A DNA stretch of 64,000 bases, from positions 186,001-250,000 of IMG/VR virus record IMGVR_UViG_3300038463_000730; one strand, given 5' to 3'. Shown here piece by piece: positions 1 through 30,026 of this stretch. A program made the translations under genes and the position numbers. The notes beneath the pieces were generated by a model, which saw only the letters and a program-made list of their open reading frames with translations, was not told where the DNA came from and ran no database searches. The stretch's first letter is position 1. Every line of letters begins with the position of its first letter.

Positions 1-1510
1 CATTCTTTGCTGCAATAGCTGGCGCTTTTGGAAGTATTTCCTTCGTAAACCAATCAGCGAAACCAACTAGTGGACTAGTAGTATTCGATTGTGCTCCAGC
101 TTCACCGGTCGGACCCGGCCCGACTTTTTCTTTAATTTCACCTAGATACTTAAGAGCCGTATCCTGGTTCTTGCTAAGAACGTTCATTAGATTCTGGGTA
201 GCTTTCTCTACATCGCCCCAAGCGCCCCATCCACGAAAAACGTTCCCATACTGTTGCGAAATATGTTCCCCAACAATCATATAAATCGAGTTAGCTAGTT
301 TCCAACCTTCACGACACTTATCAGCTGCATCAACTAGCTGCTGAGCAGTAGAATTGGGTGAAAGATTACATGCCGCCGCGATCCCTGGCAGTTGAGCCTT
401 CAATTGCTCAACATAAAACCACTGACTACGATCTTCTTTGTTTGGATTGTTGCCTAACTCAGGAGCCTGACCTCTTGTGTCCTTCTGGAATTCCTCTTTT
501 AGATCTTCCGCTTCAGCTACAACGGCATTACCGGCCGCTTGGATCTTCTCTTGCGAATACCACATGTTCATTAGTAATTGGGTTGACCCTCCACCGAGAA
601 TGCCACCGATCGCGGCCCCCAATGCCCATGTCCCAAGACCAATGGCAGCAATCGTTGATCCAATTCCTCCCCCTCCGGCCGCAGCTCCACCTCCGGCAGC
701 GGCAGCACCGGCCCCAGCACCGGCAGCAGCCGGAGTAGTAGCGGCAGCCACACCACTATTCGCAATGAACCAGTCCGCTACTTGCGGAGCACCCCTTTGC
801 GCGAGCATTTTTAGTACTTGCTCTTCGGCTTCTTTCTGAGCAATGCCTTTGGCCGTGCGACTAGCAATCATTCTCTCGATTTCTTGCATGATCGCACCAG
901 GATTCTTATCCGGCACGGTCTTCGTGAGTTGGTAAATGGCCTTTACCAGCTGACCCATGATTTTGTCAGCTGCGGGGCCGAAAAAAGGGATAGCAGTTTT
1001 CTGCATTTCCTCCTTCTCTGCCAAGATCGTCTTCAATGCAGCCAATACCATTGTCTTCGACGCTAGTTTGCCGGTCGGTTCTTTCTCTACGACGTCTTTG
1101 ATCATTTTGTGTTGATCAAGTTTGTCTTCAACGACGCCAAGCTTGTCATGAGCCTCAGCCATTTCGACCGAACCAGCAGGGTGAGCGAATTCAAGCAGAG
1201 CTTCTCCGGTCTCCCCGTCCGTACCGTACATACGTACATAGTTCTGAGCCCTGACGTTCATGCGGAACTTCTCTTCCACACGCTCTGCCTCGGCAACGAG
1301 CCCCTTTACACGTAAGCCGAAACACAAACGAAGGATATCCTGGTTTAGGTTATCCGATGGAGCCAAACTAACATGACGTGGTGCCCTGGATAGGTTCCGC
1401 GCGGCTCGTTCTAGTCCGGATTCCTCTTTGATTAAATTCTTTTCTTTGGCGAGTTTGGTAAATTGCTGCATTACCTCACTCTGGCTTTCTGAAATGTGCT
1501 TATAAGTCAT
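1..1510 (-). CDS. Probable virion/internal-head protein with Gly/Ala-rich hydrophobic (glycine-zipper-like) segment; runs off the left edge (>=503 aa); absent from the ORF track
   Basis: Manual translation from ATG at 1510 (MTYKHISESQSEVMQQFTKLAKE...EMQKTAIPFFG...GIGSTIAAIGLGTWALGAAIGGILGGG...) is open to base 1 and carries KxA motifs like its neighbours. Confidence 0.75.
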   Translation of the reverse strand, partial: MTYKHISESQSEVMQQFTKLAKEKNLIKEESGLERAARNLSRAPRHVSLAPSDNLNQDILRLCFGLRVKGLVAEAERVEEKFRMNVRAQNYVRMYGTDGETGEALLEFAHPAGSVEMAEAHDKLGVVEDKLDQHKMIKDVVEKEPTGKLASKTMVLAALKTILAEKEEMQKTAIPFFGPAADKIMGQLVKAIYQLTKTVPDKNPGAIMQEIERMIASRTAKGIAQKEAEEQVLKMLAQRGAPQVADWFIANSGVAAATTPAAAGAGAGAAAAGGGAAAGGGGIGSTIAAIGLGTWALGAAIGGILGGGSTQLLMNMWYSQEKIQAAGNAVVAEAEDLKEEFQKDTRGQAPELGNNPNKEDRSQWFYVEQLKAQLPGIAAACNLSPNSTAQQLVDAADKCREGWKLANSIYMIVGEHISQQYGNVFRGWGAWGDVEKATQNLMNVLSKNQDTALKYLGEIKEKVGPGPTGEAGAQSNTTSPLVGFADWFTKEILPKAPAIAAKN

Positions 1511-1593
1511 AAGACGGGCTCCGTTCGGGGACAAAATCGATATTGATAGATCCGGGTCTTCCTATATACGTCAAATATAGCAGTTATGATAAG

Positions 1594-2463
1594 TTACTTG
1601 GCATTTTCACGCCGTATGCGAAGAATCACCTTCTCAGTTACTCCAAAATCTTTACCTACCTTACCGGCACCTCTTGGATCTGTCATGATTTGTTTAATCT
1701 GTTCATCGGTGAATACATGTTTGTTCGACGGTGCCTGTCCGATCGTGCGATGTGGAGGTAATGTTTCGAGCGTTCCGTTGCGCTTTAGACGCTGTCCATG
1801 CTTCATGCAATATAGTTCACCTTGGTATCTTAGATAATCCCGACCTCCACCAACCACATCACAATCAGGCGCATGGCACTTTCGCTTGCCTTCTGCAATT
1901 TCTTTCTCATGACGTTGTTTGGTTGTCTCTGCGATTGACTGAATACGTTTTCCCACAGTTTCTTCTGATTGAATACGACCGGTAAATACTTCTGAGAACT
2001 TTTGGCGCATTTCATCGGTATAAACTGTTGGATTTTTAATCTTTCCTTGACTTATATTATTGCAAGCTTCTTCGGAACGTATTCTGCCTTGACTCGGATG
2101 ACCGAGTTCTTCTATTTGGCGCAATGTTGCTTCACGTAATTTTTGTTTTGTAGACTCAGAATGAGCCGAAGAGCGACCCCCAGCTTTTAGGTTATAACCA
2201 AACTCATGGTTGCGTGTATCGTACTGTGTTATTAGCACCGCTTCTGTTTCATCGGCATCCTCACGAGTTTGACAAGTAGCAATTATTTCAAAAGTAAAAC
2301 TATCAACCCCATATTTATTCATGGCACGATGAATATACTGTCCGGTTTTTTCTGGATGTTTAGCAAAATAACAATGTTGCCTCCAACGATATTGATCTTT
2401 GTTAGACTGTCCGATGTAAACTTTGCTATTTATTGTATTTGTGATTTTATATAGATAATGCAT
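1594..2463 (-). mobile_element. Free-standing GIY-YIG homing endonuclease with NUMOD3-like repeats, a zinc module and C-terminal HTH
   Basis: HYLYKITNTINSKVYIGQS, GYNL..GG and HSESTKQKL motifs; start placed at ATG 2463 behind GGAGG. Confidence 0.88.
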
Positions 2464-2526
2464 AGTTGCCTCCACTAAACTAGTGGACAGCGTATTCTAT
2501 ATATCGACCTAATCCGAATTGTATAA

Positions 2527-3216: not shown

Positions 3217-3234
3217 ACCGTATATATACCGATA

Positions 3235-3957: not shown

Positions 3958-3976
3958 AAAGTTGCAGGGATGTGAG

Positions 3977-4694: not shown

Positions 4695-7600
4695 TTAGTA
4701 CTTACGACCAGCGAAGGCCTTTGTTAGACTCGAATATAGATCGTCTGGCTCTCCTGATGGGAGCTGAGCCGATATCGGGTCACCTGATCCGATCATTCCG
4801 ATCATTGGAACACGTGATGCTTCCTTCTTGATTGCACGTGAAGGAGCCATCGCAACAATACGCTTCAAACTATTGAATGACTCGTCGTTGTAGCTGAGGA
4901 TTTCCTCGACCTGGGCCGCGAGAACGGATGGTTCCGTTCCGCACATTCCACGGTCTGCCATCTGGTAGGCCATGTCATATGCGCGTGCAACCTTTACCTT
5001 GTAGTCCGAGATCTCTTTCTCAGCAGCAGCCTTAGCATGCTCCTTTACAAGACCCTTCGCGAACTCCGATCCACCGTCAACAGGCTTCCACATCTGCATG
5101 TAGTAAGCGACTGCCGCTGGATCCGCTCCATGAGCAACGAGGTTTGGAACTTCCTCGTGGGTAATGGCTCCGGCTTTCACCATCTTCAAGATTTCCTCTG
5201 CATCCTTGCGGACCTTCGGTGGCGCCTCGGCGACATCCATCATCTTCGAGTGGATCTCTTCGATCTTCTCGATCTTGCCAAGGTCTCCCTCTGGCTTGAC
5301 GTCGAGCTGAGTCGTGTCGTCCGTGTACTTGTGGAACTCGGCCAACATTGGATTCCATTTGATCGACTCAGTCGCAAGCTTCGCACGGTATGCCGTACGT
5401 CCCTCGCGTGTCGTCAAGTCAAACGTCGCTGTATTCTTGAGTTCGAATTTCGTATCTGCTGGAGCCTGTGGCAAACTACCAAGCTGGTCCTTTGTCACTG
5501 CCACAGTGTTACCATTGTTACTATCGCTGGCCGCTGCCATTGCATGCTCCTTGTGTTCGCCTTCTTCTAGATTGACCAACTCCTTTAGCTCAGCAAGAAT
5601 TTGCTGCTCGGCTGGGTTTCCTTCGTCGTCTCCCCGTGCTTCGAGAGACGCAACCGCCTCAAGTGACTCGGTTCCACGTGCATAACGGACAAATCCGTCA
5701 AGACATTCTGTTGCATCGGCAAGAACATGGTTCGCATCAGAGATCGTGTCAGTTGACAACGTATCGATGTAAGAACGATTCTCTTCCGTGACAGCCTTGT
5801 TATCGTACAAGTCCTTCACTAGGTGAAGCTCGTCGATCTGGTTCTGAACCAAATCAGCTGTCTTGCGCATGCTGGACAATAGCGTCTTGTGAATGTCGAA
5901 ACGCATTCTCGACAATGTCGCTGTCGCCGCTGGCATACCCTCGCCCGGCGCCATCGGCGCTTCGCCTTCCATCGTCGGAATCGTATTACTAAGTTCTTCT
6001 TTTACATCGGAAAGATTAGTAATGGCTTCATCAAGCTTCTCGACCATCTGCTCTGGTCCGGCTTTGCCATCTCCGCCCTTGTCCGCTGTCGCAAGATCGC
6101 CCATCGGTGCGCCGCCCATTTCGCCCGCTGGCGAAGGAGCCGGTCCTGCCGCACCCATCGGTGCCGCATCCATTCCGCCACCCGCTGGTGCAACTGGAGG
6201 CTCGGCCTTCTTGAACATAGCAATGGCGCTTTCGAAACCATCGGCCTTGACCTTCTTCAACATCGATGCTCCGAACTCTTTCGTTGCAATCGACTCGCCG
6301 AGGACATCTGCACGTCCACTTGACAACTCATTAACAGTTGCCGCGAAAACTAGTTTGTCATCCGCAAAAATCTGCCACTGGCTCGCTCCGAGATCGACTT
6401 CACCAGTTGATGGCTTAGCAGCCTTGATGAATTTCGCTCGTAACGTTGCACGCTGCAAAAGCTCCTTGCGCTTTAGCTCGTCCTTTGGATCCGCAGACGA
6501 TGGCGACGGGTGTAGACCGGTCGTGCTGCCAACTCCTGGGAACGGAGGCTGGCCTTCCATCTGCTTGTCACCCTTCATACGAGTTTTCTCGTTGAGAGGA
6601 TCAACATCATACTTCTCTTTGCCTGGTGTGGGCTCGTTTACGCCACCCGCACCCTGGAAGTATGCACGACGCTTCTCAAGGGTTTCCTTGACGCGGGCAA
6701 TCGCTTCCTTACGGCGCGTACTACGCTGATCTAGCTCGGCGCGCAGAAGCCTCTTCTTACGAGCCTCCTCGCTTTCACCGGCTGACTGCGGTCCCGGGTG
6801 CATACCCTCGACCGGACCAGTGTCCATCTGGCCTTCCATTTGTTTATCACCGTGAGTACGGAGCTTCTCGTTTAGAGGATCCTTCTCGTACTTTGGTGTT
6901 CCTGGACTTGGCTCGTTCACACCACCGGCACCCTGAAAATAGCTCTTTTTTTCCATTGTTGTTTCCCTTGACCCATCACCTAGATTTGACAATTTACGAA
7001 AGTCCTCTTCAATCTTTGCGAGTTTATGCTCGATATCACGTTTTAGTGATAGGAACTGGTTCTTTAATGCATCATTATTCTCAGAATTCGTAGATGCAAC
7101 GCGCAAAGCGTAAGGATTATTCAGCGCCGCTGGATCTTGATCCAACGGAACCTGGGTTGCATCGACTATCGATGAACCACTATTACTAAAGTTTGAGGAA
7201 TCCTGAACCTCGCCCTCGTCTCGACCATCAAACTCTCGGATGAGAGTGTCCAGACCTTCTTTAATATGACTTACAATCTGTTGTTTAATTTCGTTGACCT
7301 TTTCACTTGATGTGCCGGTCAATGACTTAAGTTCGCTCAACCCTGCATCGGCCTGACTGTTTAGAGTCCTGGCAGATGCTAGAATATGACGAATCTTAGC
7401 TTGTGGATCGGCACCGTTAACTACGATCGATAGCTCTAGTGGCTTTAGATCCAAGTTAATCTCGCCGTAACATGACTTGCTGGTCATATGCGAACAAAAG
7501 TCCGCTTCCGTACGCGCAACACGTCCACAATCACTACAGATTGCACGACCCACTGCCGTACCCATCGATACACATGTAGCGTACCCTGTAGAAACTTTTC

Positions 7601-8117
7601 TTGCTAATTCAGGGAACGAAACTTTATCAAGCGCACATAACGCAATAACGCGCTTGGCCTTGCGGTCGTAATATGTATCGATGATTACACCACGAATGTG
7701 ATCTACTGATCCAGACTTGTGATCGATACAGAGTGGGCATCCGACCCACTTCTTGTAAGCTTTAAGTAACTCTTCCTCTGGGAAGATGTCACCGTTCGAA
7801 TTCTTGTAAGGCATGACCGATGGATCATTAGATACCCATCGAAGCGATTCGCCATTCGTCGCCCAACCAGCTGTTACCGGAAGACCACTGGCTGTCTTCT
7901 TTGGTTTACCTTCCGGGTCAACCGTTGAAGCCTCGGCTGCATGCATCATGACAGCTGAGAAATAAAGAAAGTCATCTCCCTTTGGAGCGATTCGCTTCAA
8001 ACCAGTCGCTAACGACTTAATGCGACTCTCAAGCTCTGGATCTGCAAGCACCTTCTCGGGTGACTCAATATCTGATTCCAAAACCTGACCTATTTCAGCA
8101 AACTTGTAAAGGGTCAT
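4695..8117 (-). CDS. Prohead (capsid maturation) protease fused to a long scaffold-like/polyprotein region
   Basis: N-terminal NSNGDIFPEEEL..IDH..IRGVIID..VSMG..CSDCG..C.H..E.N....ELSIVVNGADPQAKI fits a herpes/HK97-fold phage head protease; followed by coiled coils and a duplicated ~70-aa repeat. Confidence 0.78.
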   Translation of the reverse strand: MTLYKFAEIGQVLESDIESPEKVLADPELESRIKSLATGLKRIAPKGDDFLYFSAVMMHAAEASTVDPEGKPKKTASGLPVTAGWATNGESLRWVSNDPSVMPYKNSNGDIFPEEELLKAYKKWVGCPLCIDHKSGSVDHIRGVIIDTYYDRKAKRVIALCALDKVSFPELARKVSTGYATCVSMGTAVGRAICSDCGRVARTEADFCSHMTSKSCYGEINLDLKPLELSIVVNGADPQAKIRHILASARTLNSQADAGLSELKSLTGTSSEKVNEIKQQIVSHIKEGLDTLIREFDGRDEGEVQDSSNFSNSGSSIVDATQVPLDQDPAALNNPYALRVASTNSENNDALKNQFLSLKRDIEHKLAKIEEDFRKLSNLGDGSRETTMEKKSYFQGAGGVNEPSPGTPKYEKDPLNEKLRTHGDKQMEGQMDTGPVEGMHPGPQSAGESEEARKKRLLRAELDQRSTRRKEAIARVKETLEKRRAYFQGAGGVNEPTPGKEKYDVDPLNEKTRMKGDKQMEGQPPFPGVGSTTGLHPSPSSADPKDELKRKELLQRATLRAKFIKAAKPSTGEVDLGASQWQIFADDKLVFAATVNELSSGRADVLGESIATKEFGASMLKKVKADGFESAIAMFKKAEPPVAPAGGGMDAAPMGAAGPAPSPAGEMGGAPMGDLATADKGGDGKAGPEQMVEKLDEAITNLSDVKEELSNTIPTMEGEAPMAPGEGMPAATATLSRMRFDIHKTLLSSMRKTADLVQNQIDELHLVKDLYDNKAVTEENRSYIDTLSTDTISDANHVLADATECLDGFVRYARGTESLEAVASLEARGDDEGNPAEQQILAELKELVNLEEGEHKEHAMAAASDSNNGNTVAVTKDQLGSLPQAPADTKFELKNTATFDLTTREGRTAYRAKLATESIKWNPMLAEFHKYTDDTTQLDVKPEGDLGKIEKIEEIHSKMMDVAEAPPKVRKDAEEILKMVKAGAITHEEVPNLVAHGADPAAVAYYMQMWKPVDGGSEFAKGLVKEHAKAAAEKEISDYKVKVARAYDMAYQMADRGMCGTEPSVLAAQVEEILSYNDESFNSLKRIVAMAPSRAIKKEASRVPMIGMIGSGDPISAQLPSGEPDDLYSSLTKAFAGRKY
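6447..6941 (-). repeat. Two copies of a ~70-aa repeat (YFQGAGGVNEP.PG..KY..DPLNEK.R..GDKQMEGQ...G.HP.P.SA...RK..L.RA) at ~6738-6941 and ~6447-6662
   Basis: Directly visible in the translation. Confidence 0.92.
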
Positions 8118-8428: not shown

Positions 8429-9049
8429 TCACTTCGTCTTACTAAGTTCCTGCTGCTGGGCATCGAAGAGTTTACTGTCGTATGGAACCTTCTCTTCAAT
8501 ATGGTTGTCACCGCCCGCTTCATCGACCCAGCTCTTAGCTAATATATCTGTCTCCAAATAAGATTGAATACGCTCGTCCACTATTTCTTTCAATTGGTCG
8601 ATCTCTTTGCTCATCGTGTCCAATGTCTTGACTGCGTTATCTTTGAAATCGTCCGCTTGCAAGTTGTTGAAATAGTCCTTGAATATACGAAACTGTTTCG
8701 ATACATCATCAATGCTCATGTTGAAAGACTTCATCAACTTTTCAACTTGTGTGTCGGACATGAATGTCATCATGATCTGCGCACAATGAAAAGCTGCTTC
8801 CTTCATGTTATCTAGGTTTTCCTCGGCACGATCGCGATAATCGCGGAACGTCCGGCGAAACTTCCAGATCTGTTCCGGAGTGATGTCCTGGTTCTCTTTG
8901 AATGGAATGAACATCTTCTGAAGATGGTCAGCGAATACATCAATAACCTTGATCAGTTTGCTGAACGCCGTAATAGCTTTCTCAGCTTGCATTTTTTCGA
9001 CATCCGAGATGTCGTAGTTCATTTGTGTTCGATATGATCTTTTTTGCAT
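8429..9049 (-). CDS. Helical-bundle hypothetical protein
   Basis: Start moved to ATG 9049 (MQKRSY), which removes the overlap with the upstream gene. Confidence 0.6.
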   Translation of the reverse strand: MQKRSYRTQMNYDISDVEKMQAEKAITAFSKLIKVIDVFADHLQKMFIPFKENQDITPEQIWKFRRTFRDYRDRAEENLDNMKEAAFHCAQIMMTFMSDTQVEKLMKSFNMSIDDVSKQFRIFKDYFNNLQADDFKDNAVKTLDTMSKEIDQLKEIVDERIQSYLETDILAKSWVDEAGGDNHIEEKVPYDSKLFDAQQQELSKTK

Positions 9050-9050: not shown

Positions 9051-10262
9051 TTAGACAAAGCCGCCTCCAATTGGACCACTGGTTCCCCAACCAAATCCGT
9101 TCGTGTTAGTTCCACCATCGGATGTTCCGACTTGCGGAACCTCATTAGGCTCTATACCACCTGGTACCTTTTTTGGTATGATATCAGCTTTCGGGTCAGT
9201 ATCGGTTCCTTGTCCATTTTGGTTTCTAGTACTAGCCGAACTATTTACGAAATCCCAGTGACTACCGTATGACGCATCACCCATGCCGTACGGGTTGACT
9301 TCGTTAGCTTCGTACAGTCTGACGCCGAAAGATGGGTCGTTAAGCTCGTAGCTTGTATCGAACTTGTAGTCCGCCACAGCATCGGGCCACAGCATCTCCA
9401 TCGCCGAATTCGAATCTTGACCAGCTATCGCATGGATCATCTTCTCGTAAAGCGTACGTACTTTCTTTGGTAATCCGGAGCAAAAATCGAACTTGTCTGC
9501 TTCAGCAATCGCATCCTCCGGGCTCATACCTTTCGACACCCGGTACAACGCAACCACGAGCCCGGTACGATCCTTACCATGCAAACAATGTACAAAAGTC
9601 GGACCTGATTCTTCGAATAGCTCTTTGAAATTCATCTTCATCAAGCCACGCAACGACTGTTGCTTCTTAGCCATGATCGGAATTATCACGTGGACCATTC
9701 CGAGCTTCTTCACGAGTGGACCGATCTTCTTAGCCGTGTCCAAATCCAAACTAACAATCTTCTTGATACCTAGTTTCTTCAGGTATATAAGGTCCTCAGG
9801 AGTAGCGGGAGCACCTCCTCGATAAAGCTGGTCGGTAACCTTAGAAAACCTAGGAATCGCTGGGTCTTCCAACACATCCACCGAACTCTCATCCCCCTCA
9901 GGTATGCCTTCGAACTTAAATTTCTTCCCCAACAAAGCGAGTGTTGTGCGAAGCGCTTTCTCTTCACTTTTTCCTTTCAATGCTGGAAACACAGAGTCGA
10001 ACACAGACTTGAACAAGACCCGGAACAACGCAAACAATTCATCATTGCCTGACGCACGCAATTTACGCATGACCGCCGAGTACGATAGGTCACCGACGTC
10101 AGATAGGTTGATAGAGTCGGTCGCGATCTTCCGAATCTCAACTTCTTTTAGACGTTCGACTGCCTTAGAACGACTCGAAAAGGTTCCGAAGTTCTTTCCG
10201 GTGTATGATTGCACCTGGTATCTCCCGTTCGGAAGTTTCCGGATGATGGCAGTCTTGATCAT
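9051..10262 (-). CDS. Protein-tyrosine/dual-specificity phosphatase (Siw14/IphP-like) with N-terminal extra domains
   Basis: FSKVTDQLYRGGAP, LKKLGIKKIVSL and P-loop FVHCLHGKDRTG (HCX5R). Confidence 0.88.
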   Translation of the reverse strand: MIKTAIIRKLPNGRYQVQSYTGKNFGTFSSRSKAVERLKEVEIRKIATDSINLSDVGDLSYSAVMRKLRASGNDELFALFRVLFKSVFDSVFPALKGKSEEKALRTTLALLGKKFKFEGIPEGDESSVDVLEDPAIPRFSKVTDQLYRGGAPATPEDLIYLKKLGIKKIVSLDLDTAKKIGPLVKKLGMVHVIIPIMAKKQQSLRGLMKMNFKELFEESGPTFVHCLHGKDRTGLVVALYRVSKGMSPEDAIAEADKFDFCSGLPKKVRTLYEKMIHAIAGQDSNSAMEMLWPDAVADYKFDTSYELNDPSFGVRLYEANEVNPYGMGDASYGSHWDFVNSSASTRNQNGQGTDTDPKADIIPKKVPGGIEPNEVPQVGTSDGGTNTNGFGWGTSGPIGGGFV

Positions 10263-10627
10263 TACTTGATTTTTCCATGCGGCTGGAAGAATGGTGAATC
10301 ATCCGCACTGATAACGGCATCACGAATCGAACCATTACCATCCAATGCCACGATCGCGAAAATGTTGTAACCGTTTACATATATCCGGTTACCATGGACC
10401 AGTTTCTTGCTAATACGGTGGACCGAGTCCAACACCAGACAATCACCTTTGGCATCGACAAACTTCCCGATCAATACGGCATAGTTGTTCTTTCCGCTGT
10501 CTGAGTACGAGATCGATTCGAACGTATCTCCGATGTACACCTCAACCATTTGATCTTTCAGGATCTCAAAAACTGATTCAATATAAGTAGGCATGTTATT
10601 TCCTGAGCAAATTGAGTCTGAAAGCAC
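10262..10627 (-). CDS. Hypothetical protein (small beta-rich, Sm-like?)
   Basis: Tightly packed ORF; true start probably the second Met (MPTYIE). Confidence 0.55.
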   Translation of the reverse strand: MLSDSICSGNNMPTYIESVFEILKDQMVEVYIGDTFESISYSDSGKNNYAVLIGKFVDAKGDCLVLDSVHRISKKLVHGNRIYVNGYNIFAIVALDGNGSIRDAVISADDSPFFQPHGKIK

Positions 10628-14174: not shown

Positions 14175-14254
14175 GGTGACTCCATCATTACCTTTCCTAT
14201 CTATGACAAAATAATCAAAGGTTATGGCTCTTTTCCTCGGCATTGTATTCCTGT

Positions 14255-17784: not shown

Positions 17785-19638
17785 TTATCTCATTCTTGGA
17801 ACTGTGCCAAGCGTAATTGGCAAATTACCGTGTTTTCTCTTGTCAAACGGGTTATTGAAGAGTAGCGGATTTTTTACAGTGAACCCTTGTGTTAGATAGA
17901 ACTTGTAAGCCAGGTACCCGTTCAACATAGCCATGAAACCGTCATTAGGAGTCGCTCCCTTCACATAGTGCGGCGACATATCTCCAGAACGATTAACGCT
18001 TGGTTTAATCTCCATGCTAGTACAGTGCTGTACGAGCCAATTCACCTTCTCATAGTCGCCGTAAGGAAACCGTACATGGCCTTTCTTCATTTGCTCGTAC
18101 ATTTCACCAATAGAAAAGTCGCGCTCGAACTGAATCATCTTTGGAAAGATGTCCTTCTGGAACTTTACCTTGTCCATAATTCTTGGGAGCGCGTTCGATG
18201 CCAAAAACTTGTCTCCATACTCGTTCTGCATTATCTCGCAGAAGTCGTTTGAGTACCCGATATCGCATACTGCCACGTTCACACTGTAAATCCGCATCAA
18301 ATGGTCTATGAACGCCTTCTTACTAGCGAAGTCGTTACGCTTGAACTTCGCTGCAAACTCGATTTGCAGGCGTTTTGGACCGGACAGCGACATGATCACG
18401 ACGCAGCTATAGCTCTGACCAACTCCTTTCAGCTTCGAGTTCTCTGCGAGCTGCTCCATGTCCGATTTGGCCCCGATGTCGATACCCATGAACACAGCTT
18501 GCTCGGCACCCGGTGGAATATGTGCCCGGAAACGACGCCCAACATCTCCGCATTTCTCACGGACATCATCCGGAGTCATGATACCGGACTCACCCGAGAA
18601 GAACTCTCCCAATACCTCGTTCTGGTAGGCTCGTTCTGTATTGATCGGTGAGTTTCCTGGCTTTTCTGATACAATCTTCTCTTTGTTGAATTCCGGAATG
18701 AACAACTGGCTCATGTGGAAACCGATGAACGGACAATCGTCCGGGTTCTTCAACGCTACCCACTTGCCAGTTTCGGCGGCATCACGTTTATCTTGTTCGT
18801 GATTGCAATGTGGGCACTTGACGGTAAAACCGTGAAGCCACGTCTTCTCCCAGTCATCCGTGCCGGGGGTATAGAGCGGGAAGAACCGATTGCAACCAGA
18901 ACAATGTAAATTAAAATATTGCTGTGACGATTGGTTCCACATCTCGAAGAACTCGCTACCGCGCTGCTTCGGTGTACCGAAGAATATCTGAACACCGTCA
19001 CCTAGTTTTCCATAGTTAGCTTTCGCCAACATCTTGGTCGCGTTACCTATGGCGAGACCAGGGATATCTTGTACTTCATCGAAGAAAATAACATCGGCTG
19101 ATCGACCACGAAGTCTGTCAGCCGTTTCACCCGTTGATTCGATCCAGATATGATTGCCGCCAACGAACTGTTTGAAATTCAACGAATCATTTCGTCCGCT
19201 CGTTTGATCCAGTAGGCCTTGCATATAGGACCGAGGCTTCTGCCCCTTCTTCGCCTGATCGAACGACACAGCGTTCGTGATCATCGGGTTGAGCTTGGTT
19301 TTAGAGTAAGCGTAAGCTAGATCCAACTGCGGGAATGCATGGATGATACGCATCGGAGGGTTACTGGAGTTACCAAATAACCCACACCCCATGAAGTACA
19401 TCTCCAAGGCTGATGCCATCGTCGTGGCACCAACCTGGCGCCCTTTTACGATGATAACTGGCTTCGAATCTTTCTCCAAAGCCTTGATCGCAATGTAGCG
19501 ATAGATATCGGAGAACGGCTTGTAACCGCCTCGCAAAGTAAACGGTTTACCGTCGAGTGTAAGATACTTTTCGACGTAATAAATTGGGTCTAAACTTAAA
19601 AGTGAAGACTTAAGTTGTGCAAATAATTCATCAGACAT
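17785..19638 (-). CDS. Terminase large subunit (lambda GpA-like)
   Basis: Walker A KGRQVGAT, LRGRSADVIFFDE Walker B, GTP coupling motif, CxxC..CxxC ribbon, nuclease GIDIG and NDGFMA. Confidence 0.92.
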   Translation of the reverse strand: MSDELFAQLKSSLLSLDPIYYVEKYLTLDGKPFTLRGGYKPFSDIYRYIAIKALEKDSKPVIIVKGRQVGATTMASALEMYFMGCGLFGNSSNPPMRIIHAFPQLDLAYAYSKTKLNPMITNAVSFDQAKKGQKPRSYMQGLLDQTSGRNDSLNFKQFVGGNHIWIESTGETADRLRGRSADVIFFDEVQDIPGLAIGNATKMLAKANYGKLGDGVQIFFGTPKQRGSEFFEMWNQSSQQYFNLHCSGCNRFFPLYTPGTDDWEKTWLHGFTVKCPHCNHEQDKRDAAETGKWVALKNPDDCPFIGFHMSQLFIPEFNKEKIVSEKPGNSPINTERAYQNEVLGEFFSGESGIMTPDDVREKCGDVGRRFRAHIPPGAEQAVFMGIDIGAKSDMEQLAENSKLKGVGQSYSCVVIMSLSGPKRLQIEFAAKFKRNDFASKKAFIDHLMRIYSVNVAVCDIGYSNDFCEIMQNEYGDKFLASNALPRIMDKVKFQKDIFPKMIQFERDFSIGEMYEQMKKGHVRFPYGDYEKVNWLVQHCTSMEIKPSVNRSGDMSPHYVKGATPNDGFMAMLNGYLAYKFYLTQGFTVKNPLLFNNPFDKRKHGNLPITLGTVPRMR

Positions 19639-19676: not shown

Positions 19677-20396
19677 TTATGTATCTTTGGCCGGAGTCAA
19701 GATAGCAAAAGCATCTTCTTTTTGGCTTTGATCTTGATCCGATTGGTCAAGTCGTCCAAGCGTATCGTACCCTGCATAGTCAGAGTCACCCGTGTGAGAA
19801 TTGACTTTTTCAGCTGTAATTAGGCTGTTAATGTAGGTACGGAGATTTCGGTCTTCCCATTCATCCGATGGTATATTCTCTTGCTGGAACAATCGACGAA
19901 TGTGATCAAGCACGGCGTGAACATGGACGTTGCCATGGCGATCTTCAATGAAGTTTTTGATCGTGCTATCGATAATCGGATGCTCTTGACAGAGCTTTGG
20001 CATCTTTTTATTCGACTCTTCATCATCACCGAGTTCGACCTCGATAGATGGTTCAGTTGTGAGTTGAGCTTCGTCGCTCGGCACAATACCGGAGCCAGAC
20101 ATCATCGGTGGTTCGGTTGCGAACTGAGCTGTTTTGGCTAGATCCCGGCGCTCGGCCTCGGTCATCTTCAAATACGTGGCTAACCCGGTGCGCGAACGCA
20201 TATCCGATACAGCTTCCTCCACCGAGGTATAGCGAGACTTGTTTCCAATGATTTCGTTGATTCGATCGATCGGTACAGCTTCGTACTGACGTCTCGATTG
20301 AACGTTCTCTTTGTGCAAATTCTTAGCGAATGTCCGCTCTAGTTCATTAGCGAACATATCACTCTGCGTGACGATTTTGTTGCCACCACGACTCAT
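19677..20396 (-). CDS. Hypothetical head-region protein
   Basis: ORF with AGGA RBS; LAKTAQ motif. Confidence 0.6.
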   Translation of the reverse strand: MSRGGNKIVTQSDMFANELERTFAKNLHKENVQSRRQYEAVPIDRINEIIGNKSRYTSVEEAVSDMRSRTGLATYLKMTEAERRDLAKTAQFATEPPMMSGSGIVPSDEAQLTTEPSIEVELGDDEESNKKMPKLCQEHPIIDSTIKNFIEDRHGNVHVHAVLDHIRRLFQQENIPSDEWEDRNLRTYINSLITAEKVNSHTGDSDYAGYDTLGRLDQSDQDQSQKEDAFAILTPAKDT

Positions 20397-24460: not shown

Positions 24461-25201
24461 CTATTTCAGCTTGTCTCCAACTGTTTGGGTTAAAAACTTA
24501 GCCTCAGCTAATCTGACTTCAGTCGGTACCGGAACGTTGGCTTGAAAATCTAACGATCCGATACGTTTAGTGTACTGCTCAACGAAGTACAACGACGCCT
24601 CGTAATCGATCATTGACAGAACATCCTTTACCGTTTCAATGATCAGGCCAATTTGTTTATCAGCAACTTGCAACGTATGATTATGCTGGATGACTTGATC
24701 AGGCGCACCGTTATTTATCTTGTTTGCTTTATCCAATGAATCCATCAGCAGCGTAAGATACTTGAAAAGCGTATGGTCATCTTGGAATTCAGCCGGATCA
24801 TCTTGGATCTTGTCGAAAACCTGTTCAACACGCATTTCGATCATTGCTAAACAATTGTTAACTTTGTCTCTCGTAGACAACTCCGAACCTACCAGCTCCG
24901 CCAGTCGTTCTTTGTACTTTTTATTTCCACGAACCGTCGCACTGAGCGCTTTATCAATGTCGTTATCGGGACTTTTGACCTTTAAAATGTCTTCACGCAT
25001 CTGGACATAGAAATCCAGATGCGTGTTTGCAAATGTCTTAAGGAACTCTAGCGAAATCACAAATCTGGATTCGCTTGGAGTAGTGTATTTACTTTCTAAC
25101 CATACGTGAACGTCCTCCGGGGTCGAGCCCTGGATTAGTTTCGCAATAATCATATCCTTATCGGGGTGGTCCAAGAATTTTTTAATTGCAGTTTTGTTCA
25201 T
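24461..25201 (-). CDS. HTH/helical protein, candidate terminase small subunit
   Basis: N-terminal HTH-like HPDKDMIIAKLIQGSTPEDVHVWLE followed by helices; in the packaging region; assignment tentative. Confidence 0.35.
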   Translation of the reverse strand: MNKTAIKKFLDHPDKDMIIAKLIQGSTPEDVHVWLESKYTTPSESRFVISLEFLKTFANTHLDFYVQMREDILKVKSPDNDIDKALSATVRGNKKYKERLAELVGSELSTRDKVNNCLAMIEMRVEQVFDKIQDDPAEFQDDHTLFKYLTLLMDSLDKANKINNGAPDQVIQHNHTLQVADKQIGLIIETVKDVLSMIDYEASLYFVEQYTKRIGSLDFQANVPVPTEVRLAEAKFLTQTVGDKLK

Positions 25202-26314: not shown

Positions 26315-26325
26315 TTGTGCCGTTT

Positions 26326-27048
26326 TTACTGATGCCCCTTCTCGAAGAAATTACCTAGACGTGAATCACGTGTATCGAAGATGGCATGTGGCTCATTGTG
26401 AGGGATTTGTGTCTGTTCAGCCACCGATCCGCCCGGCACATGTTCGCCGGTCATCAGTTTGAACCCTGCTTCCCAATTGTACTTCTTTTTGTCGAGTGAA
26501 CACTGATATTCATGTTCGCCAACTCTAGCGATCTGGACGCCCGGATGGTCTGGGCAGTAACGTGTGTTCAACGGCGCCTCTAGAATACGATAGTCCTTGT
26601 AGTACGGACTTTTCTGAATAGCCTTTAAGTTATCCGCTGTCTTTTCTGACTTGTTTAAGTCTTCTTTGACACCCTGGTACTTCTTACGAAGCTCATCTAT
26701 TCTGCTCTCCATGTGCGCATCGGCCTCTGCCCTGGCATTCTTAGGTGCCGCAATGCTTAGGAGAAGTTCATCAAGCACAGAGGCTTGTTTCTGCAAAAAA
26801 TCGTCGCCAGAAGAGTCAAACTCTTCGGCAATGACTCCAAGTTCATCTACTTTTTCAGGCGTCAGCACAATAAACGGCTCGATGACCTCCGCCTCGGCCG
26901 CAGCCTGGCGTAGAATGTCTGCTGCCTGTACGAGCGCGTGCGCGACGATCTCGGTAGCAAGGTCGTCGTGTTCCGCAAGCATCAATGCTTCGTTATTTTC
27001 GCTTTCTAGTGCCGCAGCGAAGGCTTTTAAGTGTTCAGAGATTTTCAT
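26326..27048 (-). CDS. Putative head protein with C-terminal CPDH..C zinc-ribbon-like motif
   Basis: AEEFDSSGDDFLQKQAS module; RYCPDHPG...YQC. Confidence 0.6.
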   Translation of the reverse strand: MKISEHLKAFAAALESENNEALMLAEHDDLATEIVAHALVQAADILRQAAAEAEVIEPFIVLTPEKVDELGVIAEEFDSSGDDFLQKQASVLDELLLSIAAPKNARAEADAHMESRIDELRKKYQGVKEDLNKSEKTADNLKAIQKSPYYKDYRILEAPLNTRYCPDHPGVQIARVGEHEYQCSLDKKKYNWEAGFKLMTGEHVPGGSVAEQTQIPHNEPHAIFDTRDSRLGNFFEKGHQ

Positions 27049-27063
27049 TTGAAGTCCTTTGTA

Positions 27064-27879: not shown

Positions 27880-27894
27880 CGTTCACCAGCCTCA

Positions 27895-29529
27895 TTAGAA
27901 GAAAATCTTGCTGGTATTGAAGATCGCACCTTCGTACGACTCTTCCATGCCCTTGCGATACATGGGCTGACAATCACCATTTTTGTCCTGATAGACCTTG
28001 TGGGTCGGTAGACCGGTGTGTCCACAGATTGGGAATTTGCTGTGTGCATTACGAACGATACGAGGGCACTGTGTCTCTGGCTGCACTGGTCCGGCAGTCT
28101 TAGAAAGACCCGCTAAATAGGCAATCATCGCTGTCTCGTGCGCTTTCGCATCCATCTGAGAAAGAATGTTCAATGCGTCTTCTGCTTTCACAAAATTACG
28201 CTCGGTCATCGCCTGACGAACAACTTCAATCAACTCGGAAGGCTTCGATCCATAGAGAGGAGACGTTGCTGCCGATGCTCGGAAGTCAAAAGCCTCTTTC
28301 TTCATGAACTCTTCGATGTTTGCTCGGTTCAACGGGCGCACCGAGCCATTACAGATGAACATTTCTGCCATCGGGCTCGACGCAGTCATGCTAACCGGTA
28401 CGTGAAACGCTGTTTTGCCAAGATTTACTGCGTACGTAACAGCAGTTTCGGTGCAATCAGCAACGGCAACCTGGAAATTGCGATATCCGCAGTCCATCAA
28501 CTCGCCTTCAACCGATTTACGACCTGTAATTACCTTGCGCTCACCGAATTTGAAGTTTGCGCGACCGCCCGGTGTATCAAACTTGTCTGCAAGTGTCGTG
28601 AGACGCTCATCTTTGAACTGATGAAGCTGAACATCACGCTCGGCGGCTGCTTCTACCTTGATTCCAGTGATTCCGTTGGCAAAATAGCCTGTTTCGCTGC
28701 GATCTTCTTTGGTCGCGGCTGTCTTCATACGAGTAATAGCCAGCTCGATCGAGCTGACACCCGCACTACCACGACGAATACGATCAATTACGGCTAAAAG
28801 ATCGACCGCGCGAACTTTAATCTGGTTACCAGCGTACAAATTGAGGTAACTCTTGATGTTGTTTGCGTTCAATTCTTCTGAACCACGGTTGCTAATGAAG
28901 CAATTTGCATCCAAGGCCGTTCCGCTAACTATTTCGACCGGAACATAGACGCTAGTAGCGCCTTTTGGCGTCTCGAAAGCAGCATGAACAATAATCGCCG
29001 CTTCATTTCCATCGGCAACCGCAGTACGACAGTCAATGCCGCAGTTATGAAACGCTGCCGAGACCTTACGGACAGCATCTATGCCAGCCTTTGGTGAATA
29101 GGAACGAAGCGGAACGCTCGGGTCAAGCGCACTCGCAAGCGCGTTGGCCATGACCGGGTCCACCACACGCGCGTAATCGGCTTGTAACGAACCATCTGGG
29201 TCACGTTTGTAAACCGGAACGTCGTTAGCGTACGTCGCTCCCTTACGCAATTCTTTATGACCAATCTCTTCTGCGAAGAGTTCAGTAAATCGAGTGTTTC
29301 GACTATAAAGACTTTGGTAGATTTTCTTCAATTCCGCCCTGGTAATGAACGCTTGTCGATCAGACATGCGTGACAATACACCGGCAACTTGACGAATCGT
29401 TGGGTCATCAGGAAAATCGTTCAATGCCCTCCGGACTCTCGTCGCCAATAGAGGGAGCGCCATTTTCTCGTTGTCATCCAAGAAGTTAGCGACTGAGGAA
29501 GCAAGTTTCGTTATGTTAGTAAAGGACAT
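27895..29529 (-). CDS. Putative head/structural protein with C-terminal Cys/His motif
   Basis: ITKLAS, MKTAA, MKKEA and LSKTAG motifs; C..CGH..C tail. Confidence 0.6.
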   Translation of the reverse strand: MSFTNITKLASSVANFLDDNEKMALPLLATRVRRALNDFPDDPTIRQVAGVLSRMSDRQAFITRAELKKIYQSLYSRNTRFTELFAEEIGHKELRKGATYANDVPVYKRDPDGSLQADYARVVDPVMANALASALDPSVPLRSYSPKAGIDAVRKVSAAFHNCGIDCRTAVADGNEAAIIVHAAFETPKGATSVYVPVEIVSGTALDANCFISNRGSEELNANNIKSYLNLYAGNQIKVRAVDLLAVIDRIRRGSAGVSSIELAITRMKTAATKEDRSETGYFANGITGIKVEAAAERDVQLHQFKDERLTTLADKFDTPGGRANFKFGERKVITGRKSVEGELMDCGYRNFQVAVADCTETAVTYAVNLGKTAFHVPVSMTASSPMAEMFICNGSVRPLNRANIEEFMKKEAFDFRASAATSPLYGSKPSELIEVVRQAMTERNFVKAEDALNILSQMDAKAHETAMIAYLAGLSKTAGPVQPETQCPRIVRNAHSKFPICGHTGLPTHKVYQDKNGDCQPMYRKGMEESYEGAIFNTSKIFF

Positions 29530-29552
29530 TTCTCACCTTGTGAAATACCGAA

Positions 29553-30026
29553 TTATGCTAATCCGTTGCCAAGTTCTGGGTGTTTTTGAATGATTTCGGC
29601 CTTTGTGACCGCATCTAGACCATTCAAAAGGGCCGCGACTAGCTCTGGGTTCTTTGCCAACCTATTCGGCAAGTAGCTTTGAACAACAGGTAACTCGGAC
29701 TCAGGTAGACCGAGCGTAGAGCTGGCTAACTTTGTTACCCTGGTATCTTTGTAGAAGATGTAAAGGTCTGTGCCACTCTTATTGAGCAATACTTTCCATG
29801 GCACGTTAGCCGATGCAGTCTTCTTCTGCTCTTCATCATACAAAGTAACGATGTATTCCCCGTCCTCTGCACTTTGAATCTGCCAGAGCTGCTCCGGGTC
29901 ACCATCCTTAAAACGAACAACATCAAAAGCCACCTTCTCTAAACGGTGGTGAACGTCCTTCAGTTTGTAGGACTTTTTATCAATGGCGTTTAGAACTGTC
30001 TCGTAATCTACTGAAAACCTATTCAT
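29553..30026 (-). CDS. Hypothetical head-region protein
   Basis: Start moved to ATG 30026 behind GGAG; LEKVA, KKTAS and VTKLAS motifs. Confidence 0.6.
   Translation of the reverse strand: MNRFSVDYETVLNAIDKKSYKLKDVHHRLEKVAFDVVRFKDGDPEQLWQIQSAEDGEYIVTLYDEEQKKTASANVPWKVLLNKSGTDLYIFYKDTRVTKLASSTLGLPESELPVVQSYLPNRLAKNPELVAALLNGLDAVTKAEIIQKHPELGNGLA

What the first reader, a model, noticed from the sequence alone, without database searches (positions are those of the whole stretch)
1..30026. A K-x-A tag on nearly every head-region protein: candidate protease-processed virion cargo system
Seen: a hydrophobic-x-K-x-A (occasionally R for K, S for A) motif recurs in almost all left-arm ORFs. It is often within the first ~10 residues: MTLYKFA, MPFIKRA, MQKRS, MIKTA, MSIDKLA, MKQA, MNKTA, MSFTNITKLA. 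It also marks domain boundaries: MQKTA, LTKNA, IEKEA, FSKTA, IKKEA, IRKIA, LTKVA, LNKMA, LIKTA (right before the SLT domain), FEKQA, ITKIA, MSKYA (portal), LRKFA, LAKTA, LVKIA, LQKQA, MKKEA, LSKTA, LEKVA. I did not see it clustered this way in the replication enzymes of the right arm, but did not count. Known: T4 gp21 and phiKZ gp175 head proteases cut many internal head proteins after short x-x-E motifs. Inference: the 4695-8117 protease cleaves after K-x-A, a different specificity, and ~20 proteins here are packaged, matured and possibly injected. I cannot confirm the motif is unreported.
Basis: partly seen in the sequence, partly recalled or inferred. Interest (0 to 1): 0.9.

Follow-up and report, generated by a model that had tools for sequence, protein, structure and literature searches.

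The report
Head-protein K-x-A tag in huge phages
Head proteins of this huge phage and its relatives, including the cultured phage G, share a conserved short tag (hydrophobic-x-Lys-x-Ala) that is most likely the cutting signal of the phage's own head-maturation protease, a signal not reported before but an ordinary kind of system.

Summary
In the left-arm proteins [FLIM]-x-K-x-A occurs 35 times against about 12 expected (z≈7, also under a local-composition null). The right arm shows 16 against 13. Fourteen sites lie in the first 45 residues of 12 proteins, against 2.2 expected. Only Lys in the middle position and a hydrophobic first residue give the signal.

The window is part of a 435-kb huge phage whose closest cultured relative is phage G. 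The motif replicates in 27 diverged relatives (613 against 222), in 133 protease-scaffold proteins that are at most 50% identical (1,100 against 285), and in phage G's head module (20 against 6.7). It is absent from phage G's tail and replication genes. In poorly conserved proteins the sites stand out as conserved islands. They occur near the N-termini of the major capsid protein, the portal and several unknown proteins, and repeatedly in the scaffold-like part of the 1,140-aa protein.

That protein's N-terminal domain is a capsid-maturation protease: it is homologous to phage G gp19, gives a confident model with the herpesvirus/T4 gp21 protease fold, and has invariant His133 and Ser184.

The best reading is a prohead-protease recognition motif with a new specificity. 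Cleavage itself, the exact bond cut, and any injection of cargo are inferences only.

The parts
4695..8117 (-). 1,140-aa protease-scaffold fusion protein: N-terminal leader, protease core, then a long scaffold-like region with about 12 family-conserved motif sites
   Evidence: PHROG head maturation protease 1e-15. NCBIfam prohead protease/MCP fusion 1e-7. 36% identity to phage G gp19, E 5e-34. Conserved sites listed. More than 130 homologous fusions of 1,100-1,250 aa.
7374..8009 (-). Protease core (residues 37-248) with invariant His133 (7719-7721) and Ser184 (7566-7568), and a C-x2-C...C-x-H insert (7488-7538)
   Evidence: Invariant columns in A1/A3/A4. AlphaFold2 pLDDT 89.1. Foldseek top PDB hits are EBV protease, T4 gp21 and pseudorabies protease. 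BFVD top hit is phage G gp19 at 4e-21, followed by many annotated prohead proteases. His-to-Ser spacing is 51, against 55 in T4 and 49 in HK97.
7986..8000 (-). Second half of a conserved tandem motif just upstream of the protease core. The window has L-K-R-I-A followed by invariant P-K. Relatives have F-R-K-F-A-x-x-L-K-K-I-A-P-K. Phage G gp19 has LVKTA-AK-VVKIA-PK.
   Evidence: Alignment A1 has L40, K41, A44, P45 and K46 invariant. gp19 sequence. K/R exchange at this position across 133 homologs.
8097..8111 (-). Motif site LYKFA at residues 3-7 of the protease-scaffold protein
   Evidence: Motif at the aligned position in 18/21 orthologs.
6204..6218 (-). Motif site MFKKA (residue 634) in the scaffold-like region
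   Evidence: 17/21 orthologs; K 0.90 conserved against flanks of 0.20.
5199..5213 (-). Motif site VRKDA (residue 969)
   Evidence: 18/21 orthologs.
4818..4832 (-). Motif site IKKEA (residue 1096), near the C-terminus
   Evidence: 19/21 orthologs.
14255..16105 (-). Portal protein; motif site MSKYA at 15881-15895 (residue 71) in a Gly/Ser-rich N-terminal stretch
   Evidence: PHROG portal 1.5e-49. Site in 24/27 orthologs, K invariant, A replaced by G or S in some, flanks 0.20-0.40. Phage G portal gp14 has MAKQA at residue 16.
12756..14243 (-). 495-aa protein of unknown function downstream of the portal. Sites IDKLA (14154-14168; the true start is probably the Met at 14174) and FEKQA (13647-13661).
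   Evidence: Most orthologs begin exactly M-Q-K-T-A-Q (16/17). The internal site is kept in 17/17 with K conservation 1.00 against flanks of 0.18. Mean family identity is about 16-22%.
8429..9049 (-). 206-aa protein that starts M-Q-K-R-S (9035-9049)
   Evidence: GGAGG lies 13 nt upstream of 9049. All 14 orthologs inspected begin M-I-K-K-[S/A]-Y (one: M-K-K-K-S).
1..1534 (-). 5' part of a 558-aa gene that runs off the window's left end. Sites FTKLA (1448-1462) and MQKTA (992-1006).
   Evidence: Full gene seen in L082, the same 434,688-bp contig. The family has three conserved tandem N-terminal sites at about residues 17, 32 and 66.
26326..27048 (-). 240-aa protein of unknown function; site LQKQA at 26782-26796
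   Evidence: 18/23 orthologs. A second conserved site at about residue 45 is present in relatives.
24461..25201 (-). 246-aa protein that starts M-N-K-T-A (25187-25201)
   Evidence: 14/27 orthologs start M-N-K-[NT]-A.
19677..20396 (-). 239-aa protein. Relatives carry a conserved L-Q-K-D-A-V-Q-P at about residue 32. The window copy has LAKTA at 20127-20141 instead.
   Evidence: 26/27 orthologs. The window's own site is not positionally conserved.
10596..12737 (-). 713-aa protein with a lytic-transglycosylase-like domain (about residues 310-425), preceded by a lineage-specific 310-residue extension with four sites (12663-12677, 11913-11927, 11835-11849, 11805-11819)
   Evidence: PHROG hits to hub/lysozyme-type families, 1.5e-9 to 1.3e-5. 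Orthologs are about 380 aa and lack the extension. Sequence.
9051..10262 (-). 403-aa dual-specificity/tyrosine phosphatase with a lineage-specific N-terminal extension carrying MIKTA (10248-10262) and IRKIA (10122-10136)
   Evidence: Pfam Y_phosphatase3 3e-9 and related families. Orthologs are about 250 aa, without the extension and without a consistent site.
17785..19638 (-). Large terminase, with no motif site. Serves as an internal negative control together with the nucleotidyltransferase (21685-22530) and the homing endonucleases.
   Evidence: PHROG TerL 3.6e-56. TerL, NTase and endonucleases together: 1 site against 1.4 expected.

Best explanation
The motif, hydrophobic (L/F/I/M, less often V) - x - Lys (Arg tolerated) - x - Ala (Gly/Ser tolerated), often followed by Gln or Ser, is the recognition motif of the phage's own prohead (capsid-maturation) serine protease. 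That protease is the N-terminal domain (residues about 37-248, His133/Ser184) of the 1,140-aa protein encoded at 4695-8117.

Proposed sequence of events:
1. The protease is built into the procapsid as part of a protease-scaffold fusion.
2. After shell assembly it cuts the scaffold-like part of its own polypeptide at about a dozen sites.
3. It removes short N-terminal leaders (5 to about 45 residues) from the major capsid protein, the portal and about ten other head-module proteins.
4. It separates domains in a few of them.

Shown here: the motif, its head-specificity, its positional conservation, and the identity of the protease.
Inferred: that the motif is cleaved, and by this enzyme.
Unresolved: the bond cut. 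After the Ala fits P1 = small residue and P1' = Ser/Gln, as in herpesvirus assemblin A|S. After the Lys fits P3 hydrophobic and P1 Lys, as at HK97 gp5 F-N-K|S. My estimate is roughly 55:35.
For: - Enrichment limited to head-module proteins, in the window, in 27 relatives (613 against 222) and in cultured phage G (head genes 20 against 6.7, z 5.4; tail genes 11 against 8.8; replication genes 7 against 7.6).
- Sharp residue specificity in a control that keeps relatedness: conserved [FLIMV].X.[AGS] sites number 37 for X = K (13 in poorly conserved flanks, 12 N-terminal), against at most 20, 3 and 5 for any other residue. A hydrophobic first position gives 37, against at most 7 for other classes.
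- In 133 protease-scaffold proteins at most 50% identical: 1,100 against 285 (3.9x), R 2.5x, E/D/Q/N/S/T 0.7-1.1x, median 13 sites per protein, Q 5x and S 2.4x after the Ala.
- Placement is typical of processing sites. They sit near N-termini of the MCP (L-V-K-Y-A in 46/46), the portal and the 373-, 400-, 558-, 239-, 495- and 206-aa families. They form conserved islands in variable linkers and occur many times in the scaffold.
- K/R and A/G/S exchanges occur at the same aligned positions. This fits a binding pocket, not chemistry on the Lys side chain.
- Protease identity.
- Precedents: T4 F-L-T-E65|A and L-L-R-E10|S, and HK97 F-N-K103|S104, read from the fetched genomes; the positions of the cleavages are established knowledge. 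phiKZ/SPN3US A/S/G-x-E processing (PMC10052503, PMC5694885).
Against: - No direct evidence of cleavage. The phage G virion mass-spectrometry paper (Gonzalez et al. 2020, PMC7316594) is not held. The 2025 phage G proteomics used strict tryptic searches and its supplement is not held.
- Several families carry the motif at the very first residues (M-x-K-x-A). A cut there would remove only 3-5 residues, an odd propeptide.
- The best-conserved copy, upstream of the protease core, is followed by an invariant Pro. That is unfavourable for a cut after the Ala.
- Phage G's MCP gp27 lacks an N-terminal site.
- About two thirds of the individual window sites are not positionally conserved.
- More distant relatives with the same protease and MCP families (Rhodococcus E3, Mycobacterium Cali, Tunturi_5) show no significant enrichment. 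There is only a marginal Arg version, z about 1.8.
Confidence: 0.7

Rival explanations
1. The motif is a docking or capsid-targeting peptide. It binds the scaffold, the shell interior or the protease-scaffold protein to bring proteins into the procapsid, and is not itself cut, or cutting happens elsewhere.
For: Several families start exactly with M-x-K-x-[A/S]. The most conserved copy is followed by Pro. The 400-aa and 558-aa families share a longer N-terminal module around the motif, PHI-x-K-[IV]-A-[QK]-E-K-G. T4's capsid-targeting sequence is a precedent for N-terminal targeting (established knowledge).
Against: A loading tag would not be expected in the MCP and portal themselves, nor about 13 times per scaffold protein. 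Internal sites lie in variable linkers ahead of conserved domains, as at cleavage sites. Targeting and cleavage are not mutually exclusive.
Confidence: 0.12
2. A different protease reads the motif: a host enzyme or another phage enzyme. Phage G, for example, encodes ClpP/ClpX.
For: [quoted passage not shown] Host Prp processes head proteins of staphylococcal phage 80alpha (established knowledge).
Against: The motif co-occurs with this protease family in phages from very different settings: Lysinibacillus phage G and environmental huge phages. The protease-scaffold protein is itself the densest carrier. ClpX reads termini, not internal linkers. No Clp gene lies in the window.
Confidence: 0.07
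3. The invariant Lys is a site of covalent chemistry, such as an isopeptide cross-link as in HK97 capsids, or a modification, and not a protease determinant.
For: Lys is by far the most constrained position.
Against: Arg replaces Lys at the same aligned positions and is itself enriched 2.5x. Sites lie in leader-like N-termini and in scaffold, which normally leave the capsid.
Confidence: 0.04
4. There is no function. The pattern is a by-product of amphipathic helices or coiled coils rich in Leu, Lys and Ala, or of the reader choosing the pattern after the fact. Lys at codon 3 of N-terminal copies may reflect translation efficiency.
For: The only PDB sequence hit of the protease leader is a designed coiled coil with LKKIA heptads. 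PHI-x-K-x-L and PHI-x-K-x-V are mildly raised, z about 2.4. Many individual sites are not conserved.
Against: E, R, Q and D in the middle position are not enriched, although helices would allow them. A local-composition null gives the same z. L.K.A is the top well-populated triple in an unbiased scan. The portal site lies in a Gly/Ser-rich stretch. Tail proteins of phage G show no enrichment. The motif replicates in independent sequence sets.
Confidence: 0.03

Closest known systems
Bacteriophage T4 gp21 prohead protease and its substrates (gp23, gp24, gp22, internal proteins with capsid-targeting sequences)
   Same: A phage-encoded serine protease of the assemblin-like fold, assembled with the scaffold. 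It trims N-terminal leaders from the MCP and many head proteins and shreds the scaffold at a short motif with a hydrophobic residue two positions before a charged one. T4 gp21 (5jbl) is among the top structural matches.
   Different: The T4 motif is L/I-x-Glu|, with the small residue directly after Glu (F-L-T-E|A, L-L-R-E|S). Here the charged residue is Lys, one more residue precedes the obligatory Ala, and PHI-x-E-x-A is not enriched. There is no Pfam Peptidase_S77 hit. The protease is fused to a scaffold of about 900 residues.
phiKZ gp175 / SPN3US gp245 prohead proteases of giant phages
   Same: Giant phages in which many head and ejection proteins are processed at one short motif, with extra motif copies inside propeptides (PMC10052503, PMC5694885).
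   Different: Their motif is S/A/G-x-Glu. This is an unrelated phage lineage, with an MCP of the phage G/HK97 type and no chimallin-type biology implied.
HK97 gp4 protease cutting gp5 at Lys103|Ser104
   Same: A capsid protease of the same fold superfamily. The site reads F-N-K|S, hydrophobic at P3 and Lys at P1 (sequence checked; the position of the cut is established knowledge). BFVD structural matches include COG3740 HK97-type proteases.
   Different: There is no requirement for Ala two residues after Lys in HK97, which has few substrates. No Pfam Peptidase_S78 hit here; hhalign probability is negligible.
Herpesvirus assemblin (EBV, HCMV, HSV-1, PrV proteases)
   Same: Top structural matches. 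It is a protease fused to scaffold in one polypeptide. It cuts after Ala with Ser at P1', resembling ...K-x-A followed by S/Q here (herpesvirus site consensus from established knowledge).
   Different: Herpesvirus sites have hydrophobic P3/P4 and no Lys requirement, there are only two sites per precursor, and these are eukaryotic viruses.
Phage G (Donellivirus gee) gp19
   Same: The closest characterised homolog (36% identity, E 5e-34; Foldseek E 4e-21). It has the same tandem motif before the core, and the same motif enrichment is seen in its head module.
   Different: gp19 is a stand-alone 300-aa protein, not a 1,140-aa fusion. Its specificity has not been reported in any text I could reach.

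Membership tests
Capsid-maturation (prohead) serine proteases of the assemblin / T4 gp21 / HK97 gp4 fold | The characteristic fold | tested here: met
   AlphaFold2 model pLDDT 89.1, pTM 0.83. The four best PDB matches of this fold are EBV protease, T4 gp21 (two chains) and pseudorabies protease (prob 0.93-0.97, E 5e-3 to 2e-2). In BFVD there are 197 hits at E<=1e-3, led by phage G gp19 and including annotated prohead and COG3740 proteases.
Capsid-maturation (prohead) serine proteases of the assemblin / T4 gp21 / HK97 gp4 fold | Conserved catalytic His and Ser with the family's spacing | tested here: met
   His133 and Ser184 are invariant in 19-, 31- and 69-sequence alignments. Spacing is 51, against 55 in T4 (H85/S140) and 49 in HK97 (H65/S114). 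hhalign places them on T4's His and Ser but with negligible probability, so equivalence is inferred. The third catalytic residue was not identified.
Capsid-maturation (prohead) serine proteases of the assemblin / T4 gp21 / HK97 gp4 fold | Gene lies in the head module between portal and major capsid protein, next to or fused with scaffold | tested here: met
   Gene order is TerL, portal..., protease-scaffold..., MCP. The same order is seen in phage G, Rhodococcus E3 and Mycobacterium Cali.
Capsid-maturation (prohead) serine proteases of the assemblin / T4 gp21 / HK97 gp4 fold | Proteolytic activity on head proteins | not testable with these tools
   Needs expression or virion proteomics.
Curated sequence families Peptidase_S77 (T4 gp21) and Peptidase_S78 (HK97) | Match to the Pfam model | tested here: not met
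   No Pfam hit on the protease segment at E<=0.01. None of 74 homologs carries a precomputed protease Pfam domain. Only PHROG 18299/4523 and NCBIfam NF045541 match, the latter below its cut-off.
T4/phiKZ-type x-x-Glu processing systems | Cleavage motif ends in Glu | tested here: not met
   [FLIM].E.A: 9 against 10.9 in the window; 192 against 260 in 133 homologs; 4 conserved sites against 37 for Lys.
T4/phiKZ-type x-x-Glu processing systems | Many head proteins carry removable N-terminal propeptides ending at the motif | tested here: inconclusive
   Motif sites lie at residues 1-45 in 12 window proteins and in about 10 conserved families. Removal of the leaders is not shown.
Packaged and ejected internal head proteins (T4 IPs/Alt, phiKZ/SPN3US ejection proteins) | Presence inside the mature capsid and delivery into the host | not testable with these tools
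   Only context is available: a phosphatase and a transglycosylase-like protein encoded between portal and protease, with motif-bearing extensions in this phage only.

The most novel reading that the evidence does not exclude
The motif does double duty. Head proteins are recruited into the procapsid because their PHI-x-K-x-A tags are held in the active site of the still-latent protease, which is itself part of the scaffold. This would be substrate-tethered cargo loading. The invariant ...L-K-K-I-A-Pro-Lys segment just before the protease core would be an uncleavable pseudo-substrate that keeps the enzyme shut until assembly. Very short N-terminal tags (M-x-K-x-A) would then make sense as loading handles, not propeptides, and lineage-specific tagged extensions (phosphatase, transglycosylase) would be a simple way for these huge phages to add new packaged enzymes.
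Probability: 0.15. Interest if true: 0.75.

Novelty: new variant of a known kind. Interest (0 to 1): 0.55.

Why it matters
Phage G is the only cultured 'megaphage', and its environmental relatives are a very large group: this protease family alone has 2,716 clusters at 50% identity.

- If the motif is the maturation signal, a simple pattern predicts which proteins of uncultured huge phages enter the capsid, where they are trimmed, and which enzymes have been newly recruited as packaged cargo.
- It would add a Lys/Ala-based specificity to the Glu-based ones known from T4 and phiKZ, which helps in understanding how the substrate pockets of assemblin-fold proteases evolve.
- It is directly testable in phage G.
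- If the cut follows the Lys, it would be invisible to ordinary trypsin-based proteomics. That would explain why it has not been seen.

Tried and rejected
- Megablast of the head region against deposited phages: no match.
- Pfam on all left-arm proteins: almost nothing beyond TerL, phosphatase and nucleotidyltransferase.
- Profile search of the protease against PDB sequences: only a designed coiled coil.
- First AlphaFold2 run with 19 sequences: pLDDT 46, discarded.
- hhalign against single T4 gp21 and HK97 gp4 sequences: negligible probability, used only for residue spacing.
- Looked for the motif in more distant relatives with the same MCP and protease families. There was no Lys enrichment in Rhodococcus E3, Mycobacterium Cali or Tunturi_5, and only a marginal Arg version. 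I do not claim the motif beyond the phage G / huge-phage lineage.
- Searching relatives with the 544-aa protein alone found only the same contig. Its one full-length ortholog does not keep the five sites.
None reports a Lys/Ala prohead-protease motif. Gonzalez et al. 2020 could not be read and the 2025 supplement is not held, so 'unreported' is provisional.
- Rejected as explanations: helix periodicity, local composition, a DNA-level motif, and a general property of late or structural proteins.

Full report
WHAT THE WINDOW IS. All long ORFs lie on the minus strand. The window is identical to part of IMG/VR contig 3300038463_000730, which is 434,688 bp. Its portal has more than 300 relatives at 61-71% identity on contigs of up to 480 kb. 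No deposited phage matches at the DNA level. The closest cultured relative is Bacillus/Lysinibacillus phage G (497.5 kb): its MCP gp27 is 52% identical and its protease gp19 36% identical.

The left arm is a head-morphogenesis module. In the direction of transcription it holds the following genes:
- Several genes of unknown function (30-19.7 kb), with an HNH endonuclease and a CCA/poly(A)-polymerase-like nucleotidyltransferase among them.
- TerL (17785-19638).
- A 540-aa ORF.
- The portal (14255-16105).
- A 495-aa protein.
- A 713-aa protein with a transglycosylase-like domain.
- A tyrosine/dual-specificity phosphatase (9051-10262).
- A 206-aa protein.
- A 1,140-aa protease-scaffold protein (4695-8117).
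- Small proteins and a GIY-YIG endonuclease.
- A 558-aa gene that runs off the left end.

The MCP (338 aa, PHROG 2522, E 1.7e-73) lies about 5 kb beyond the left edge on the same contig.

- A null that shuffles only within 10-, 20- or 40-residue blocks gives the same result (z 6.8 against 0.8). Locally Lys/Ala/Leu-rich segments therefore do not explain it.
- Dropping the three richest proteins leaves 21 against 8.2.
- TerL, the nucleotidyltransferase and the endonucleases together have 1 against 1.4.
- In an unbiased scan of all a.b.c triples, L.K.A (17 against 4.8) is the top well-populated pattern.
- The specificity is narrow. K-x-A alone is not enriched. Neither are R, E, D, Q, T, S or N in place of K, nor S or G in place of A, within the window.
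- Fourteen sites fall in the first 45 residues of 12 left-arm proteins against 2.2 expected. The right arm has 4 against 3.5.
- Synonymous codons vary freely at the sites.

DOES IT REPLICATE? In the portal neighbourhoods of 27 relatives the count is 613 against 222, with each locus individually raised. Relatives share ancestry, so I counted sites conserved in at least 60% of each ortholog alignment for every possible middle residue.
- Lys gives 37 sites, 13 of them in poorly conserved surroundings and 12 N-terminal.
- No other residue exceeds 20, 3 and 5 respectively.
- A non-hydrophobic first position gives at most 7.

Examples of conserved sites:
- The 495-aa family (16-22% identity overall) keeps M-Q-K-T-A-Q at its very start in 16/17 members. 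It keeps [LMI]-[IV]-K-E-A-G before its conserved C-terminal half in 17/17, with K conservation 1.00 against flanks of 0.18.
- The portal keeps the motif in a Gly/Ser-rich N-terminal stretch, with K invariant and Ala exchanging with Gly or Ser.
- The MCP keeps L-V-K-Y-A at residues 22-27 in all 46 distinct sequences.
- Families of 373, 400, 558, 239 and 206 aa have conserved sites at residues 1-35.

A profile search of 1.84 billion representative proteins found 2,716 members of the protease family. In 133 full-length protease-scaffold proteins that are at most 50% identical to one another:
- The motif occurs 1,100 times against 285 expected, with a median of 13 per protein.
- Arg is partly tolerated (2.5x).
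- E, D, Q, N, S and T are not enriched (0.7-1.1x).
- Gln (5x) or Ser (2.4x) follows the Ala.

IS IT HEAD-SPECIFIC? In phage G, genes gp4-gp28 (portal to MCP) have 20 against 6.7 (z 5.4), with N-terminal sites in gp9, gp13, the portal gp14, gp17, gp19 and gp20. The tail module gp174-gp195 has 11 against 8.8. Replication genes gp199-gp236 have 7 against 7.6. So the motif is not a property of late or structural proteins in general. It belongs to proteins made next to, and presumably assembled into, the head.

THE PROTEASE.
- Residues 37-248 of the 1,140-aa protein match PHROG 'head maturation protease' (1e-15) and NCBIfam 'prohead protease/MCP fusion' (1e-7). They match phage G gp19 (E 5e-34) and proteins annotated as prohead proteases in Rhodococcus E3, BcepSaruman, Erwinia Y3 and Dickeya phages. 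No Pfam model covers the family.
- A 69-sequence alignment gave a confident model (pLDDT 89.1). Its best PDB matches are EBV protease, T4 gp21 and pseudorabies protease. HSV-1 and HCMV proteases rank 9th and 12th (prob 0.69-0.77), with unrelated MCE-domain proteins between them. Its best BFVD matches are gp19 and many prohead proteases.
- His133 and Ser184 are invariant and spaced as the catalytic pair of T4 and HK97.
- The rest of the protein is scaffold-like, with helical stretches, Pro/Gly-rich stretches and an internal repeat, and carries about 12 family-conserved sites.
- Just before the core all members have a tandem copy, F-R-K-F-A-x-x-L-K-K-I-A-P-K. The window has L-K-R-I-A and phage G has LVKTA-AK-VVKIA-PK.

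MECHANISM. The distribution matches what is known for T4 and for phiKZ/SPN3US: leaders on the MCP, portal and minor head proteins, many copies in the scaffold, and copies flanking the protease core (PMC10052503, PMC5694885; T4 from established knowledge). I therefore take the motif to be the recognition motif of this protease (confidence about 0.7).

Which bond is cut is open.
- For a cut after Ala: the position accepts only small residues, the next residue is preferentially Ser or Gln, and assemblins cut A|S.
- For a cut after Lys: the spacing hydrophobic-x-charged| is that of T4 (F-L-T-E|A, L-L-R-E|S). HK97 cuts its capsid protein at F-N-K|S. The best-conserved copy has Pro after the Ala.
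- A cut after Lys would look tryptic and escape standard proteomics.

WHAT IS NOT SUPPORTED. Cleavage is not demonstrated. 'About 20 substrates' is too many, since conserved sites support roughly 13 families. The five sites of the 544-aa protein are not conserved. The sites of the phosphatase and the transglycosylase-like protein sit in N-terminal extensions that orthologs lack. That is interesting as a possible way of recruiting enzymes into the head, but it is evidence for one phage only. Nothing here bears on injection. The motif is not significantly enriched in more distant phages with the same MCP and protease families.

NOVELTY. Processing of many head proteins at one short motif is well known. 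A Lys/Ala-based motif for the phage G lineage was not found in any text I could search or read. The key phage G virion paper was not available. I rate it a new variant of a known kind and of moderate interest, chiefly because it is clean, widespread and directly testable in a cultured phage.

Noticed in passing
whole window; L002/L082 (IMGVR_UViG_3300038463_000730): The window belongs to a 434,688-bp huge-phage contig. Relatives reach 480 kb. The closest cultured relative is phage G, and the MCP and protease families also occur in Mycobacterium cluster C, Rhodococcus E3, and the Erwinia Y3 and Dickeya JA jumbo phages.
   Followed up: partly
window 1-1534 (-): A 558-aa gene runs off the left end of the window, so the ORF lister does not show it. 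The major capsid protein and a likely decoration protein lie about 4-6 kb further on (L082:18669-19385 and L082:19490-20506).
   Followed up: yes
window 1594-2475, 25182-25898, 31915-32526 (-): Two GIY-YIG endonucleases (both start ...YLYKITN...KVYIGQ) and one HNH endonuclease sit among head and replication genes. They are probably free-standing or intron-borne homing endonucleases. The HNH gene is present in only a few relatives at this place.
   Followed up: no
P0071-P0073; P0110, P0131, P0133 and other homologs of about 1,500 aa: Some homologs of the protease carry Hint/intein domains. Many long homologs match the protease profile in two stretches split near the N-S-N-G-D motif, suggesting inteins or other inserts inside the protease gene.
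   Followed up: no
window 6900-6941 and 6621-6662 (-): Internal repeat in the scaffold-like region (Y-F-Q-G-A-G-G-V-N-E-P-[ST]-P-G, about 93 residues apart). The first copy is preceded by M-E-K-K-S and the second by L-E-K-R-R-A. P.G.P triples are also over-represented in the left arm (12 against 2.1).
   Followed up: no
window 7488-7538 (-): A C-x2-C...C-x-H cluster directly after the catalytic Ser segment of the protease. Phage G gp19 also has it. It is possibly a zinc-binding insert.
   Followed up: no
window 21685-22530 (-): A CCA-adding/poly(A)-polymerase-like nucleotidyltransferase is encoded inside the head module and conserved in all 27 relatives. Phage G has one elsewhere (gp199). No tRNA gene occurs in the 64 kb.
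   Followed up: no
window 9051-10262 (-): The phosphatase has, besides its N-terminal extension, a Gly/Asn/Thr-rich C-terminal tail of about 120 residues that the 250-aa orthologs appear to lack.
   Followed up: no
L082:16228-17349 and orthologs: In the 373-aa family the conserved motif is followed by long hydrophobic, membrane-like segments (for example LAPGAISVAFSAMGLGWLGMLFGLAM). It is a candidate membrane-active head protein.
   Followed up: no
L164 (Rhodococcus E3), L165 (Mycobacterium Cali), L172 (Tunturi_5): The MCPs of these distant relatives have a similar site near the N-terminus: L-G-R-F-A at residues 11-15 in the two actinophages and L-L-K-S-A at 17-21 in Tunturi_5. The high-GC actinophages show several PHI-x-R-[TS]-A-G sites. 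This hints at an Arg version of the motif, which is statistically marginal.
   Followed up: partly
window 38742-42272, 49565-52908, 61861-63609 (-): By their first residues the right arm appears to encode a DnaE-like polymerase with a PHP-type start, an SbcC/SbcD-like pair and a topoisomerase/Toprim-like protein. These were read from N-terminal sequence only and not searched.
   Followed up: no
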